DNA of 64,000 nt from the IMG/VR virus record IMGVR_UViG_3300043219_000566, positions 1 through 64,000 of that record. One strand, given 5' to 3'. The translations under genes and the position numbers were made by a program. The notes beneath the pieces were generated by a model that ran no database searches, was not told where the DNA came from, and saw nothing but the letters and a program-made list of their open reading frames with translations. Each line of letters starts with the position of its first letter. Within the stretch, counting starts at the first letter, position 1. Positions 8,712-14,300 of the stretch are shown in pieces.

Positions 8712-8921
8712 TCAAGAAATATGGAAAACCGGGTCGCCCTGCTCACCGTCGTAACGGTGAACATCGGCCGTCTCCAGCGCAGGCAACCGGCCTACGCCGA
8801 CAATGCTCTGCAAATCACGCATGACCTCCTTGGCTTTGATGCCAGGACTGAACACCAGCAACGCCCCGACACGATCACATTTCTCCGGAATGTCCTCATC
8901 GATGATTTTTACTTCGACCAT
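8712..8921 (-). CDS. hypothetical protein directly downstream of the TIGR array
   Basis: Strong AGGAGGAG RBS lying between the last array unit and the ATG. Confidence 0.6.
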   Translation of the reverse strand: MVEVKIIDEDIPEKCDRVGALLVFSPGIKAKEVMRDLQSIVGVGRLPALETADVHRYDGEQGDPVFHIS

Positions 8922-8942
8922 AGTGCTCCTCCTGCGAAAACA

Positions 8943-10462
8943 AACGCGCTTTTCCGAATCGGGTGTCTACAACCGGACGGCGCGCTCAACATGGGCGAGT
9001 GACTGAAGCAGAACGGCGCGCTAGTATTCGGCGGGTAACTGGGCACTCACGGCACGCTATCGTATGTTGGGTAACTAGGGTTCGGCGGCGCGCTTGTGCA
9101 AGTCGGGTGGCTACGTCCGGCCGACACGCTGACGTACAACGGATGACTGGCATCGCGAGGCGCGCTGCTGATCAATGGGGGGCTATCTCGGTATGGCACG
9201 CTAACCCGCTTCGGGTGTGACTTGCCGCGATCGGCGCGCTTCAACCATCTGGGTGACTGTTGCTATTCGGCGCGCTCTGACCCCACGAGTAACTCACACA
9301 CTCCGACACGCTCAGCTCATTCGGGTGACTGGCCGGATACGGCGCGCTGACGTTCACCGGATAACTAACATAAGGCGACACGCTTAGCTTGAGCGGGTGA
9401 CTAATCGGGGCTGGCGCGCTACGCCCGGAAGGTTAACTTTCTTGTCGCGGCACGCTGGGGACAAGCGGATGACTCGTTCTCACCGGCGCGCTAACTTGTC
9501 TAGGGTAACTGGGTCCGATCGGCACGCTAGCGTACAACGGTTGGCTCAGCCGATTCGGCCCGCTCATGCAGCTCGGAGGGCTAACCTGTAGCGGCGCGCT
9601 CTGGTGAACAGGGTGACTAATACTGGACGGCGCGCTTGGGCGACTCGGGAGACTAGATCCAAAACGGCACACTCATTCTCGTCGGGCAACTCCGGGTAAT
9701 CCGGCGCGCTTTCGAGCTAAGGGTAACTACACGAGTACGGCACGCGAATGTAACGCGGGTAACTGCTCCGCTGCGGCACGCTGCGGCACTGTGGGTAGCT
9801 TGATCGGCCTGGCACGCTTGGGCGACTCGGGCGACTGAAGTTGAGCGACACGCTGCGCCAGTACGGATGACTATATTCGTATGGCGCGCTGTTCACTGAC
9901 AGAGAGCTAAAACTGGTCAGCACGCTGCGCCAGTACGGATGTCTTGACACGTTCGGCACGCTGTTCCATCGCGGGTTACTATCCGTTGCAGGCGCGCTCT
10001 GCCTCCTAGGGTGACTGCCGCATGATGGCACGCTCCAACTACGCGGAGGACTACGTTGAAACGGCGCGCTATTGTGGTCTGGATAACTTCCACTATACGG
10101 CACGCTCCCACGACACGGGTAACTGTCCCACTCCGGCACGCTACCGCGTATAGGGTGACTTTCATCGACCGGCACGCTCAGTTTGCACGGATGTCTAATC
10201 TGCGCTAGCACGCTCCTGTTCCCCGGATGACTGGATACGTCCGGCACGCTTCTTCGCTTCGAGTTACTGTCAGCCGCAGGCACGCTACGTATTTCCGGGT
10301 AGCTAGTTTCGCACGGCACGCTCGTTCTTGCTGGATAACTCTCCTGTTCTGGCACGCTCCTGCGTCCAGGGTAACTTAGTCTGCGCGGCGCGCTCTGTTT
10401 CCGCGGATGACTGTTTCGCGACGGCGCGCTAAAACACTTCGGGTAACTGCCGTTCAGCGGCA
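8943..10462 (-). ncRNA. TIGR-like array, downstream half (about 42 units of 36 nt)
   Basis: Plus strand GG(C/A)(A/G)CGCT + 10 nt + GG(G/A)T(A/G)ACT + 10 nt, with a 36-nt period (9015, 9051, 9087 ... 10387, 10423). Minus strand reads AGYGYGCC(R)-N9-AGYYAYCC(R)-N9. Orientation is inferred from the co-oriented Nop-domain gene. Confidence 0.85.
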
Positions 10463-10474
10463 ACACACACACAA

Positions 10475-10501
10475 GGAGCCTGCGCGAATCGCGCAGGCTC
10501 C
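10475..10501 (-). terminator. 12-bp hairpin after the tasA stop (terminator or processing stem)
   Basis: GGAGCCTGCGCG-AAT-CGCGCAGGCTCC, followed on the minus strand by TTGTGTGTGTG rather than a U-tract. Confidence 0.5.
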
Positions 10502-10519
10502 CTGCATGGGCAGACAAAT

Positions 10520-11644
10520 CTACGCAGCCGCGCTGTCGCCGTGCTGCAGCTTGCGGTCCTGGTACGACGGGAAGACCGGCAGGCCTTCCAGCTTACGCCA
10601 CTGGCAGTAGAGATCCTTCAGGAACATCTTGACCATGTAACGCACCGACATCTGGTACCGACGGGCCGCACTGGTGATGTAGTGCAGCTTCCCGTCCTTA
10701 CCCTCTGCCTGCTTGCCATCGTTGTGCGTCCCGTACTGCTCGTGGTTGTTCATACGGTGCCGGTAATTGTAGTAGACCCGCGCGTACGAATCCTCCGGGC
10801 TGACCAGCACTTGCTTGCGCGGCCGCTTCCGGCGGTTCTTCTCGTCCTCGCGGCCCCAGAGCGTCGCGCCACAGACCGTCCACGTTCCTTCGACCTTGCG
10901 CTCCAGACAGCTCTTGATCCTCCGGACAACCTCGGGGGCCTCCTCGTACGTCCGCTCGTCGCAGTAATCCCACTTGCCCACCTTCAGCAAGTTGGGACCG
11001 AGCACGCCCATGAGCTTCGTCTTCAGCCACGGGTTGTACGTGACGCTGAGCCGCGTCACCTTATTGCCCGCATGGTTGGTGTACTCCCGATCAACCAGAT
11101 GCTCCTTGCGCTTGGAGCGCCCGCGGTGGTCTCCGGCGACATCGAGCCCAGCGTACTTCCACAGGCTAGACGCATACCTGGCCTTGCGGATGTCGAACTC
11201 GCTGATGATCACCGCTGCCGCAACTTCCCCGATCCCGTCGATCGAGTTCAGCCACGGCCAGATGGAGCACTCGCTCAACAGCGCAGGCAGCGATTTGACC
11301 AGCTCCTTCTCGGCCGCAAGCAAGCTGTCGAGTACCCCGAGCAGCGCCTTCTCCGCCCCGGTGGCGATCAGGCCCTCGCCCTCTTCGAGCGGAAGTTCGC
11401 TCGCCGCCGCATCCGAAAGCCGCTTGCAGCTCTCGCGGAGCGCCGCAAGGTACTCCAAGCTCTGCTTGCTCAGCTCCTTCTCGGCCTTGCCGGGTTCTTG
11501 CCCCAGCTTGAACTTGATCTCCCCCACCAGCCGGTTGCTGCACGCGATCCGCAAACGTTGCGCATCGTCGCGACCCCGGACCGCCAGGCGAACTGCTCGC
11601 CGGAAGAGATCGAAAGGGTCAATGTCTCTTACAGATGCTACCAT
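10520..11644 (-). CDS. tasA: TasA-like Nop-domain protein (IS110/Nop5-related, no recognisable RuvC or HNH domain), 374 aa
   Basis: Start MVASVRD at ATG 11644 after AGGAG. Coiled coil RDDAQRLRIACSNRL; Nop/IS110 C-terminal motif IWPWLNSIDGIGEVAAAVIISEFDIRKARYASSLWKYAGL...YNPWLKTKLMGVLG...RYMVKMFLKDLYCQWRKLEG. Flanked on both sides by 36-nt dual-repeat arrays. Confidence 0.8.
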   Translation of the reverse strand: MVASVRDIDPFDLFRRAVRLAVRGRDDAQRLRIACSNRLVGEIKFKLGQEPGKAEKELSKQSLEYLAALRESCKRLSDAAASELPLEEGEGLIATGAEKALLGVLDSLLAAEKELVKSLPALLSECSIWPWLNSIDGIGEVAAAVIISEFDIRKARYASSLWKYAGLDVAGDHRGRSKRKEHLVDREYTNHAGNKVTRLSVTYNPWLKTKLMGVLGPNLLKVGKWDYCDERTYEEAPEVVRRIKSCLERKVEGTWTVCGATLWGREDEKNRRKRPRKQVLVSPEDSYARVYYNYRHRMNNHEQYGTHNDGKQAEGKDGKLHYITSAARRYQMSVRYMVKMFLKDLYCQWRKLEGLPVFPSYQDRKLQHGDSAAA

Positions 11645-11690
11645 GGTACTTCTCCTGTGTGTGTGAATGAAACAATGTCTTCTTTCAAAG

Positions 11691-14300
11691 AAGACGCTTT
11701 TCTCAGTCGAGCAACTAGTGCTCGTCGGCACGCTTTGTTTTTCCGGATGTCTGGCCCTCGGCAGCGCGCTCCTTTTGCACGGATAACTACCTTCACTCGG
11801 CACGCTGTAGTCATCTGGATGTCTCGGCTCCGGCGGCGCGCTTAGTTACTCTGGGGGTCTAAGACCTAACGACACGCTAATTGCTGCTGGGAGACTTGTT
11901 CGTGACGGCGCGCTAGTCCCTTCTGGGTAGCTGTTTCGTGACGGCGCTCTATTAGTCCGTGGGTGGCTGCGTCTTCTCGGATCGCTAGGAGCGCGCGGAT
12001 GACTATCACGATACGGCGCGCTGAATCCCTACGGATGACTACCCGATCAAGGCGCGCTAGACGTCCACGAGTAGCTGTCACAAAGCGGCACGCTGCTGCT
12101 ACACGGATAACTAAATGCGGCAGGCGCGCTGTTCAAACATGGGTGGCTAGGGCGTGTTGGCGCGCTCAGGGCCTCTGGATTACTAAACGTTTCCGGCACG
12201 CTGTACGTCAACGGAAGACTCGTGTGATGCGGCACGCTGGGGCAATGCGGATGACTAACCAGGGCTGGCTCGCTCTCTTGTCATGGAGATCTAGGATGGA
12301 ACGGCACGCTCTGTCTTTCCGGGTGACTACCGCCGATTGGCGCGCTACTTCATCCTGGGTGACTGGACTACGTCGGCACGCTGCACGTTCGTGGGCAACT
12401 GGTGGATTGCGGCGCGCTCCGACTCACTGGGTAACTATCACCTGGTGGCGCGCTGGGGCAATCTGGGTGACTCGCACGATACGGCGGGTACGCGGCACGC
12501 TGAACTCGGCCGGGTGACTCATCAGGGACGGCACGCTCTTTTGTCGTGGGGATCTAGGCTGGAACGGCGCGCTCGGCCTTTCCGGGTGGCTGCGGTCGCG
12601 TGGCACGCTAAATCTAGGCGGGTATCTGGCCAAAAATGGCGCGCTTATGCAGCCCGGGTGGCTGACATTGCTCGGCACGCTGTACCTCAACGGAGATCTT
12701 TGTGAACGTGGCACGCTTATACGACACGGATGACTCTGGGTATGCGGCACGCTGAACTTGAGCGGGTGTCTCGCCCCGGTTGGCACGCTCCATCGTCCAG
12801 GGTGACTGGCGCGACATGGCACGCTGCACTTCTGCGGTTGTCTCCAGTCGCTTGGCGCGCTAGTCTTCTGCGGGCAACTTTAGTCGCACGACACGCTAGT
12901 CCCGCCTGGGTAACTCCGCCTTTTTGGCACGCTGGAGGAAGCTGGATGTCTACCTCGCCGCGGCACGCTAATTCCGAACGGGCGACTTATGACGCGCGGC
13001 ACGCTCCGCCCCGGCGGTTGACTGCGACTCCTTCGGCACGCTCAAGCGGTACGGGTTGCTGAGCGAACTAGGCGCGCTTTCGCGGAACGGGTGACTGTGA
13101 CTGTACGACACGCTCCGCTCGCTTGGATAGCTCCTTCTGTGCGGCGCGCTACGGTTGTTCGGGTGACTGCCACGATACGGCGCGCAAAGGCCCCTCGGGT
13201 GGCTGGCCAAAGACGGCGCGCTGGGACGGCTCGGGTGACTTAGTGGAGCTGGCGCGCTTATTGTGCGCGGAAGACTAACGCGACATGGCGCGCTCGTACG
13301 GTACGGGTGGCTATTTCGGAGCGGCACGCTAGGGTGACAAAGGAGACTTTGCTCACTCGGCGCGCTCATTCGATACGGGTGACTGAGCAAGCTAGGCGCG
13401 CTCTAAACAAGCGGTTGTCTCGTCCTGCTCGGCGCGCTGTAACCTGTCCGGGTGACTACCGCTTGTCGGCGCGCTCACTGCTTCTGGGTAACTGCCGTTT
13501 CTCGGCACGCTGAGTAGACGCGGGTAACTACCGCCTGCAGGCGCGCTATCGCTGACCGGATGACTCGGATGGAACGGCGCGCTGTGCACGTTTGGGCAAC
13601 TATTTCCGCATGGCACGCTGCACAAGCTCGGGTAGCTCGCATCATGCGGCACGCTGGTTCCTGACGGGTAGCTTGCAAGCTCAGGCGCGCTGCGCTCGCA
13701 CGGGTGACTTCTCCGCTGTGGCACGCTTTTGTCGTACGGATGACTTCTATCCTCCGGCGCGCTGATATTCTGCGGGTAGCTAACGGATGACGGCGCGCCT
13801 TCGCCGACTGGGTAACTAACGTGATACGGCACGCTGACTTCTGCTGGGCAACTTTCGACATACGGCACGCTCGACCAGCGCGGGTGTCTTGTAGCGCGTG
13901 GCGCGCTTTCTTCCCGCAGATGACTGTGCTGGTACGGCGCGCTATCTCCTTCAGGGGTGGCTAGAGCGATGCGGCACGCTATTACGGAACGGGTAACTCG
14001 GCCTAATTGGCGCACTGGACCGACACGGGTAGCTCGTGGCACGCGGTACGCTTATGTCCTACGGGTGTCTGGCATCTCACGACACGCTGTTCTTGCAAGG
14101 ATGACTTCCGCCAGACGGCGCGCTAAGTTGTCCCGAGTGGCTTCTATTGGACGGCGCGCTCGGCTGGCTCGGGTGACTGACAATGGACAGCACGCTAACT
14201 TCGTCGGGGTGACTGAGTTTCCACGGCGCGCTAATTGTGCCCGGATGACTAGCGTTGGACGGCACGCTGTAATCCAACGGGTAACTCCACTACTACGGCG
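11691..14300 (-). ncRNA. TIGR-like array, upstream half (about 72 units of 36 nt plus one truncated unit)
   Basis: Same alternating GGCRCGCT / GGRTRACT 8-mers with 10-nt variable gaps from 11691 to 14297; a few 37-nt units and a partial unit at 12483-12493. Confidence 0.85.

What the first reader, a model, noticed from the sequence alone, without database searches (positions are those of the whole stretch)
10464..11695. Inverted repeat brackets the tas gene and overlaps its ribosome-binding site
Seen: 10464-10478 CACACACACA-A-GGAG and 11652-11665 CTCC-TGTGTGTGTG are reverse complements with a 1-nt bulge. In the minus-strand RNA the 5' arm contains the tas SD (AGGAG). The 3' arm overlaps a local 12-bp hairpin (10475-10501) that competes for CTCC. 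An 8-bp hairpin (11677-11695) closes the upstream array. Inference: long-range pairing could loop out the gene, bring the two array halves together and occlude tas translation, acting as a switch or processing stem. Alternatively these are the ends of a cassette inserted into one ancestral array.
Basis: partly seen in the sequence, partly recalled or inferred. Interest (0 to 1): 0.7.

Follow-up and report, generated by a model that had tools for sequence, protein, structure and literature searches.

The report
Complementary CA/UG tracts bracketing phage tasA
A guide-RNA-binding gene (tasA) that sits between two very long TIGR guide arrays of a 216-kb phage is bracketed by a real complementary (CA)5-GGAG / CUCC-(UG)5 pair, kept in its only close relative, that probably ties the two ends of the tas mRNA together, though pairing is unproven.

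Summary
The two (CA)5/(TG)5 10-mers are the only ones in the whole 216.5-kb contig, and they sit at the two ends of one gene. The gene is a nuclease-less Tas (TasA-like, 374 aa) on the minus strand. It lies between two co-directional dual-repeat TIGR arrays of about 72 and 42 units of 36 nt.

The only close relative found (L010, Tas 74% identical) keeps both arms. It shares no spacers with the window, and the adjacent hairpins differ. In L010 the arms form a contiguous 14-bp helix that needs three G·U pairs, so it works only in the sense RNA, and it buries the ribosome-binding site. In the window the strong local hairpin holds CUCC, so only the (CA)·(UG) clamp is predicted and the ribosome-binding site stays accessible.

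Three results count against over-reading:
- There are only two loci and no true compensatory change.
- Random fragments of this genome often give equally good predicted end-to-end helices.
- 24 other complete tas loci show no significant flank complementarity.

Best reading (about 0.4): a clade-specific 5'UTR–3'-flank RNA clamp on the tas mRNA, analogous to the icaR and hbs interactions. It is a new variant of known kinds and of moderate interest.

The parts
11695..14300 (-). Upstream dual-repeat TIGR array, about 72 units of 36 nt. On the sense strand the edge repeat is AGCGYGCC(G), the loop repeat is AGUYAYCC(G), and spacers are 9 nt. It starts with a 5'-truncated edge and ends with the half edge AGCG (11698-11695).
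   Evidence: 36-nt parse. Spacer lengths (195 of 200 are 9 nt). Orientation follows the AG...CC(A/G) box D/box C pattern on the tas strand in other tas loci and in PMC12045711.
11677..11695 (-). 8-bp A/U-rich hairpin that overlaps the last half edge by 1 nt and is followed by AUUGUUUCAUU. It is a terminator-like end of the upstream array.
   Evidence: L010 has a different, GC-rich hairpin plus a long U-rich tail at the same place.
11652..11665 (-). 5' arm: (CA)5 followed by GGAG. AGGAG (11656-11652) is the tas ribosome-binding site.
   Evidence: Conserved in L010 as ACACACACA...GGAGAA.
10520..11644 (-). tas gene, 374 aa, TasA-like. It has a Nop/IS110-type RNA-binding domain, no nuclease domain was detected, and it carries a clade-specific insertion of about 70 aa with three conserved Cys.
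   Evidence: Pfam PF02371, E = 2.4e-5, the only hit at E <= 1. PHROG 4285, E = 5.6e-30. PDB TasH E = 6e-5 and chain 9mty (IS116/IS110/IS902 C-terminal domain protein) E = 4e-3. Homologues next to dual-repeat arrays. Alignment with P0003.
10475..10501 (-). GC-rich hairpin of 12 bp (up to 19 bp with G·U pairs) just after tas. Its 3' strand ends in the CUCC of the 3' arm. It acts as a terminator-like element or 3' stabiliser and lies within a 42-nt stretch that L010 lacks.
   Evidence: (I1), (z = -4.99).
10464..10478 (-). 3' arm: CUCC-U-(UG)5, that is, an anti-SD-like CUCCUU followed by the UG tract. One U separates it from the first half edge of the downstream array.
   Evidence: Conserved in L010 as CUCUUGUGUGUGU directly after the stop codon.
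8943..10462 (-). Downstream dual-repeat TIGR array, about 42 units. It begins with the half edge UGCC(G) (10462-10458) and runs without a terminator into the next small ORF (8921-8712).

Best explanation
The two arms are cis-acting RNA elements of the tas transcript. The (CA)n-GGAG leader and the CUC(C)UU-(UG)n tract just downstream of the stop codon pair with each other. This closes the tas mRNA into a panhandle inside a long array-tas-array transcription unit.

Shown:
- The arms exist, are unique in the genome, and lie on the tas sense strand together with both arrays.
- Both arms are conserved in the only close relative, while neighbouring non-coding sequence is not.

Inferred:
- The arms pair in the RNA.
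- The conserved core function is the (CA)·(UG) clamp. It holds the 5' leader to the 3' end of the tas message and thereby sets its stability and/or how it is cut out of the poly-tigRNA precursor.
- The anti-SD-like CUCCUU adds translational repression where it is free, as predicted in L010. In the window a later-acquired local hairpin, whose 5' strand is an SD mimic (GGGAGCC), captures CUCC and relieves that repression.
For: 1. Non-random placement. The only two (CA)5/(TG)5 10-mers in 216.5 kb flank one gene in inverted orientation. The conserved upstream block is unique in the genome, so it is not a reiterated promoter motif.

2. Conservation. L010 (Tas 74% identical; 63% identity at fourfold-degenerate sites) keeps ACACACACA and GGAGAA upstream and CUC-UUGUGUGUGU downstream. 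If flank sites diverged like fourfold-degenerate sites, runs this long would survive with probability of about 0.63^9 and 0.63^13. Meanwhile the upstream hairpin is replaced, the 3' hairpin is absent, and no spacer is shared.

3. Strand specificity. The best L010 helix is 14 contiguous pairs and needs three G·U pairs, so it exists only in the sense RNA. The two differences from a pure CA repeat (C to U and A to G) are both wobble-compatible.

4. Folding. The MFE and centroid structures of both full-length RNAs contain the long-range helix. Mean pair probability is 0.68 in the window and 0.82 in L010. SD accessibility in L010 drops from 0.29 to 0.011 when the 3' arm is present.

5. The 3' arm contains CUCCUU. 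From general knowledge, not a tool result, this matches the anti-SD core at the 3' end of 16S rRNA.

6. Precedent. The icaR 3'UTR pairs with its SD (PMC3868564). The hbs mRNA has a 14-bp 5'/3'-UTR interaction that modulates RNase cleavage (PMC5737220).
Against: - There are only two loci, and no pair changes on both sides. Conservation of two simple repeats does not prove that they pair.
- Predicted end-to-end helices are common. 7 of 36 random 1281-nt fragments of this genome score at least as well as the window, and 1 of 36 at least as well as L010.
- Total duplex energy of the flanks is unexceptional. 1687 of 2042 pairs with the same geometry are equal or better.
- In the window the SD is not predicted to be sequestered, so translational occlusion is not a conserved outcome.
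- Terminator-like hairpins on both sides of tas in the window may end transcripts inside or before the arms.
- 24 other complete tas loci, including ones with arrays on both sides, have no significant flank complementarity, so it is not needed for TIGR-Tas function.
- No RNA data exist for this phage.
Confidence: 0.4

Rival explanations
1. The arms are two independent single-stranded elements whose complementarity is incidental. The CA-rich, structure-free leader promotes ribosome loading on tas. The UG-rich tract serves the downstream array, as a leader or spacer before its first half edge, or as the U/G tail of the terminator-like hairpin in the window.
For: - Each arm sits next to something it could serve: the SD/ATG on one side and the first half edge of the downstream array on the other.
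- The CA tract is unpaired in local folds.
- Thermodynamic closure is not exceptional.
- SD occlusion is not conserved.
- CA repeats have been reported to enhance translation in E. coli (my recollection of Martin-Farmer and Janssen 1999; not checked here).
Against: - It needs two separate functions for two sequences that happen to be exact complements and the only such tracts in 216 kb.
- L010 has no hairpin before its UG tract, so 'terminator tail' cannot be the conserved role.
- Other tas loci start their downstream arrays directly after the stop codon with no such leader.
- The CUCC/CUCU next to the UG tract complements the SD in both loci.
Confidence: 0.3
2. The arms are a DNA-level relic: inverted ends left by the event that placed tas inside, or built arrays around, an ancestral edge repeat (cassette insertion or inverted duplication). 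They were inherited by both phages and have no present RNA role.
For: - The half edges on either side (GGCA 10459-10462 and CGCT 11695-11698) add up to exactly one edge repeat.
- The 3' arm lies one base from the half edge.
- Tas is related to IS110-family transposases (Pfam PF02371; PMC12045711).
Against: - The 5' arm lies 29 nt inside the upstream boundary, so the repeats are not terminal on both sides.
- There is no target-site duplication.
- No recombinase or RuvC/DEDD domain was detected.
- The element is single-copy.
- Truncated half edges at array ends are a general TIGR feature (PMC12045711).
- The arms are better conserved than fourfold-degenerate sites while neighbouring sequence turned over, which argues for present selection.
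- The L010 helix depends on G·U pairs.
- No locus with an uninterrupted array was found.
Confidence: 0.15
3. The arms form an RNase III-type processing stem, like the stems that flank 16S and 23S rRNA, which excises tas mRNA from the array precursor.
For: - The long-range helix brackets the gene exactly.
- In the window it can stack on the 16-bp local hairpin to give a quasi-continuous helix of about 25 bp.
- The icaR 5'-3' duplex is an RNase III substrate (PMC3868564).
Against: - The helix is only 9-14 bp, which is short for RNase III.
- Dual-repeat arrays are reported to be processed by the Tas Y/H dyad itself (bioRxiv 10.64898/2026.09.09.750476), so no extra nuclease is needed to free the flanks.
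- The host is unknown.
Confidence: 0.1

Closest known systems
Dual-repeat TIGR-Tas loci (Faure et al. 2025, PMC12045711; TIGRFinder survey, bioRxiv 10.64898/2026.09.09.750476)
   Same: - A Nop-domain Tas protein.
- A 36-nt unit of edge repeat, 9-nt spacer A, loop repeat and 9-nt spacer B.
- Box D/box C-like AG...CC(G) motifs shared by both repeats.
- Arrays on both sides of tas, beginning and ending with truncated edge repeats, with a terminator-like hairpin after the upstream array.
   Different: - The arrays total about 114 units, against 5-15 described as most common.
- tas is bracketed by a conserved complementary (CA)n-SD / anti-SD-(UG)n pair. Neither paper's main text mentions inverted repeats, UTRs or autoregulation, and none of 24 other complete tas loci examined shows such a pair.
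icaR mRNA 5'UTR-3'UTR pairing in Staphylococcus aureus (PMC3868564)
   Same: A C-rich anti-SD-like motif downstream of the stop codon is complementary to the gene's own SD. Pairing is predicted to block initiation (L010) and would create a duplex.
   Different: - Here the anti-SD motif is extended by a 9-10-bp dinucleotide-repeat clamp.
- The gene lies between guide-RNA arrays rather than in an ordinary mRNA with a long 3'UTR.
- In the window the anti-SD motif is locked in a local hairpin.
- Nothing has been tested experimentally.
Bacillus subtilis hbs mRNA 14-bp 5'/3'-UTR interaction (PMC5737220)
   Same: A long-range helix of about 14 bp joins leader and trailer of a short mRNA. It is proposed to control access of ribonucleases rather than translation alone.
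   Different: The sequences and the organism are unrelated, and there is no evidence here for RNase Y or RNase J sites.
Terminal or subterminal inverted repeats of insertion sequences (IS110/IS1111 relatives of Tas)
   Same: [quoted passage not shown]
   Different: - No catalytic recombinase domain.
- Single copy.
- No target duplication.
- One arm is not terminal.
- The arms include the SD and an anti-SD mimic.

Membership tests
TIGR-Tas, dual-repeat type | Tas protein with a Nop / IS110-type RNA-binding domain | tested here: met
   Pfam PF02371, E = 2.4e-5, above its cut-off. PDB TasH chains E = 6e-5 and chain 9mty (IS116/IS110/IS902 C-terminal domain protein) E = 4e-3. 370 homologues were found, and those examined lie next to dual-repeat arrays.
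TIGR-Tas, dual-repeat type | Array of two alternating 8-12-nt repeats separated by spacers of about 9 nt, with a period of about 36 nt | tested here: met
   Edge AGCGYGCC(G) and loop AGUYAYCC(G) on the tas strand. 195 of 200 parsed spacers are 9 nt.
TIGR-Tas, dual-repeat type | [quoted passage not shown] | tested here: met
   Both repeats begin with AG and end with CC(G). Compare UG...CCA for TasR in PMC12045711.
TIGR-Tas, dual-repeat type | Arrays are transcribed and cut at mid-edge into 36-nt tigRNAs that bind Tas | not testable with these tools
   No RNA run was listed for this DNA.
TasA subtype (no nuclease domain) | Absence of an N-terminal HNH or RuvC domain | tested here: inconclusive
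   No HNH or RuvC Pfam hit at E <= 1, and the N-terminus aligns with nuclease-less relatives. No structure was predicted.
5'UTR-3'UTR anti-SD interaction (icaR type) | A motif downstream of the stop codon is complementary to the gene's own SD | tested here: met
   CUCC(U) against (A)GGAG in the window, and UCUC(U) against GGAGA in L010.
5'UTR-3'UTR anti-SD interaction (icaR type) | The pairing is the favoured structure and occludes the SD | tested here: inconclusive
   Predicted in L010 (SD unpaired probability 0.011 with the arm, 0.29 without) but not in the window (0.52 with, 0.39 without). The random-fragment control shows that such predictions are weak evidence.
5'UTR-3'UTR anti-SD interaction (icaR type) | Both arms lie on one transcript, and mutating them changes translation or stability | not testable with these tools
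   This needs RNA end mapping and reporter assays.
Structured RNA supported by covariation | Compensatory (two-sided) changes in homologous loci | tested here: not met
   Only one homologous locus exists. Its changes are one-sided and wobble-compatible.
Insertion sequence or mobile cassette with terminal inverted repeats | Repeats at both termini, target-site duplication, own recombinase, several copies | tested here: not met
   The 5' arm is 29 nt inside the boundary. There is no duplication beyond the shared edge repeat. No catalytic domain was detected. The element is unique in the contig.
Intrinsic terminator (hairpin 10475-10501) | GC-rich stem followed directly by a U tract | tested here: inconclusive
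   The stem is very stable (z = -5). The tail is UUGUGUGUGUGUU, the simple scan does not call it, and the hairpin is absent from L010.
RNase III processing stem (rRNA type) | A duplex of about two helical turns flanking the excised RNA | tested here: not met
   The helix is 9-14 bp. It approaches 25 bp only by stacking on the local hairpin in the window.

The most novel reading that the evidence does not exclude
tas behaves like an intervening sequence inside one edge repeat of a single guide array of about 114 units. Tas's own Y/H ribonuclease activity cuts at the two half edges that flank its message. The (CA)·(UG) clamp holds the two cut ends together, juxtaposing the end of one array with the start of the other. 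The released tas mRNA is then a panhandle whose translation and lifetime depend on how much Tas is available to process the precursor. This would be a built-in feedback between effector level and guide maturation.
Probability: 0.1. Interest if true: 0.75.

Novelty: new variant of a known kind. Interest (0 to 1): 0.42.

Why it matters
How Tas protein is expressed from loci where the gene lies inside, or between, arrays that are themselves diced into guides is an open point. The 2026 survey only speculates that guide maturation and Tas translation may be linked.

A conserved leader/trailer clamp with an anti-SD mimic would be a first concrete cis-element for that coupling. It could be tested directly with compensatory mutants in a heterologous host. 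It would also extend bacterial 5'-3' UTR pairing to a phage RNA-guided system.

If the arms turn out not to pair, the finding shrinks to a clade-specific pair of leader elements in an unusually large phage TIGR locus.

Tried and rejected
1. Total RNAduplex energy of the two flanks against same-geometry pairs across the genome. It does not discriminate: 1687 of 2042 pairs are equal or better. I dropped it as evidence.

2. Partition-function closure against 36 random 1281-nt fragments. Such helices are common, so fold predictions are reported only as 'compatible'.

3. A general property of TIGR loci. None of 24 other complete tas loci has significant flank complementarity; the best is L016 at p = 0.09. 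None has CA/TG flanks.

4. More clade members. Protein scans of IMG/VR, JGI metagenomes and GTDB genomes, an alignment-based scan, a repeat-pattern scan, arm-pattern scans (117 or more unrelated hits for the 5' pattern with no tas, and none for the 3' pattern), a search with the clade-specific insertion and a neighbouring-gene search all gave nothing closer than about 43% apart from L010.

5. RNA evidence. No RNA run was listed. The one DNA run holds only the source contig, with no inversion, deletion or repeat-length variant.

6. Guide-directed autoregulation. No spacer pair matches the phage's own genome beyond the roughly two loose hits expected by chance, and none lies near tas.

7. A reiterated phage promoter motif. 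The conserved upstream block is unique in the contig, and no sigma-70-like promoter was found in 8-16 kb.

8. Phase-variable microsatellite. The tracts are only 5 units long and show no length variant, so this is not supported.
Full report
**What is at the coordinates.** Window 10464-10478 reads CACACACACAAGGAG and 11652-11665 reads CTCCTGTGTGTGTG. They are reverse complements apart from one extra A (I4 and I11). The 12-bp hairpin at 10475-10501 and the 8-bp hairpin at 11677-11695 are also there. The 10-mer CACACACACA occurs twice in the window against 0.10 expected. In the whole 216,501-bp contig these are the only (CA)5/(TG)5 10-mers on either strand.

**Context.**
- The contig is phage-like: it carries a DNA polymerase, an SbcC-like protein and DnaB-like and other helicases. 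It has 59.7% G+C and is held by a marine-sediment metagenome run.
- The bracketed gene is window 10520-11644 on the minus strand and encodes 374 aa.
- The protein hits Pfam PF02371 and PHROG 4285. In the PDB it matches TasH chains and chain 9mty, an IS116/IS110/IS902 C-terminal domain protein.
- No nuclease domain was detected, so I call it TasA-like.
- Both sides carry dual-repeat TIGR arrays with a 36-nt period.
- On the tas strand the repeats read AGCGYGCC(G) (edge) and AGUYAYCC(G) (loop), with 9-nt spacers.
- The same AG...CC(A/G) layout lies on the tas strand in other tas loci. It corresponds to the box D and box C motifs of Faure et al. (PMC12045711).
- The order on the minus strand is therefore: an array of about 72 units (14300-11695), a hairpin, the 5' arm with the SD, tas, a GC hairpin, the 3' arm, and an array of about 42 units (10462-8943).
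- Arrays on both sides of tas, truncated half edges at array ends and a terminator after an array are all described features (bioRxiv 10.64898/2026.09.09.750476).
- A tas-bracketing inverted repeat is not described. Neither paper's main text mentions inverted repeats, UTRs or autoregulation.

**Comparative evidence.** All searches together gave a single close relative, L010, a Logan contig whose Tas is 74% identical. The two genes are 63% identical at fourfold-degenerate sites, and the two loci share no spacer.
- The upstream hairpin is a different sequence in L010.
- The GC hairpin after tas lies in a 42-nt stretch that L010 lacks.
- Both arms persist. Upstream, L010 has ACACACACA, then a 10-nt insertion, then GGAGAA before the ATG. 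Downstream it has CUCUUGUGUGUGU directly after the stop codon, abutting the first half edge of the downstream array.
- The best L010 helix is 14 contiguous pairs, ACAUGCACAGGAGA with UCUCUUGUGUGUGU, and includes three G·U pairs.
- That helix exists only in the sense RNA. The two departures from a pure CA repeat are both wobble-compatible transitions.
- This is conservation with one-sided compatible changes. It is not covariation.

**Folding and its controls.** Full-length folds of both loci (about 1.27-1.28 kb) contain the long-range helix in both the MFE and the centroid structure. Mean pair probabilities are 0.68 (window, 9 bp of CA·UG) and 0.82 (L010, 14 bp).

In L010 the 3' arm lowers the unpaired probability of the SD from 0.29 to 0.011. 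In the window it does not (0.39 without the arm, 0.52 with it), because the local hairpin holds CUCC.

Two controls limit what these folds can show:
- Among 36 random fragments of the same length from this genome, 7 have an end-to-end helix scoring at least as well as the window and 1 at least as well as L010.
- The raw duplex energy of the flanks is unexceptional.

The folds therefore show compatibility only. The weight of the case rests on uniqueness, placement and conservation.

**Generality.** Among 26 tas loci with complete flanks, only the window and L010 show a significant complementary pair, and only they have CA/TG tracts at the gene ends. The feature is specific to this clade. The clade is also marked by a roughly 70-aa insertion with three conserved Cys.

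**Interpretation.** The most economical reading is one function for two exactly complementary, genome-unique, conserved tracts on one transcript. In that reading they form a leader-trailer clamp that closes the tas message. An anti-SD-like CUCCUU adds translational repression where it is free (L010). In the window it is neutralised by a hairpin whose 5' strand mimics an SD.

Known analogues are the icaR 3'UTR-SD pairing (PMC3868564) and the 14-bp hbs 5'/3'-UTR interaction that controls RNase access (PMC5737220). I put this reading at about 0.4.

The rivals are:
- Independent leader elements whose complementarity is incidental (0.3).
- A DNA-level relic of how tas came to sit in an edge repeat (0.15). 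The two half edges do sum to one edge repeat, but the element fails the tests for a mobile cassette, and half edges are generic array ends.
- An RNase III-type processing stem (0.1; overlaps with the best explanation). The helix is short, and dual-repeat arrays are reported to be cut by Tas itself.

**What could not be done.**
- No RNA run was listed.
- The single DNA run shows only the source contig, without variants.
- No further clade member was found.
- Guide-directed self-regulation and a reiterated promoter motif were checked and rejected.

**Verdict.** This is a real, conserved, clade-specific pair of complementary tracts around tasA in a very large phage TIGR locus. RNA pairing is plausible but unproven. 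It is a new variant of known kinds and of moderate interest.

Noticed in passing
window 8943-10462 and 11695-14300 (minus strand): The two TIGR arrays together hold about 114 units of 36 nt, of which at least 100 are well formed. PMC12045711 units most common. No spacer pair matches the phage's own 216-kb genome beyond chance, and none is shared with the related locus L010.
   Followed up: partly
window 11555-11644 (minus strand): The public gene call for tas (P0002, 344 aa) is 30 residues shorter at the N-terminus than the ORF that starts at ATG 11644. That ATG has an AGGAG SD, and the 30 extra residues are conserved in the 74% relative. The longer ORF is probably the right one.
   Followed up: yes
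window about 10775-10980 (P0001 residues about 222-290): A clade-specific insertion of about 70 aa in the Nop domain carries three Cys conserved between the window and L010. It is absent from the roughly 40%-identical TasA relatives. It may bind a metal or contact RNA.
   Followed up: no
L074 3932-6340 (Ralstonia phage phiRSL1, NC_010811 13180-15590): ORF034, annotated 'transposase', is a Tas homologue (31.5% identity, E = 2e-22). It is followed by a GC hairpin and then a degenerate dual-repeat array of about 1.3 kb. So another jumbo phage has a hairpin between tas and its downstream array.
   Followed up: partly
window 9637/9819, 9855/9927 and 11875-11951: Identical spacers recur within the downstream array: on the + strand, TGGGCGACTC occurs twice and GCGCCAGTAC twice. 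Two neighbouring units of the upstream array are 78% alike. This suggests the arrays grow by local duplication.
   Followed up: no
window 12483-12500: One irregular unit (GGCGGGTACGCGGCACGCT on the + strand) shifts the 36-nt register of the upstream array.
   Followed up: no
window 10449-10463 and 11699-11726 (minus strand): The array units next to tas look degenerate or self-structured. The first half edge plus spacer A of the downstream array folds into a 5-bp hairpin (UGCCG/CGGCA). The last unit of the upstream array has a poor loop repeat, and its spacer B pairs with the tail of the 8-bp hairpin.
   Followed up: no
window 8921-8950 (minus strand): The downstream array ends without a terminator. 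It runs straight into the SD and ATG of a 69-aa ORF (8712-8921) that is syntenic in L010, which suggests read-through from the array into downstream genes.
   Followed up: no
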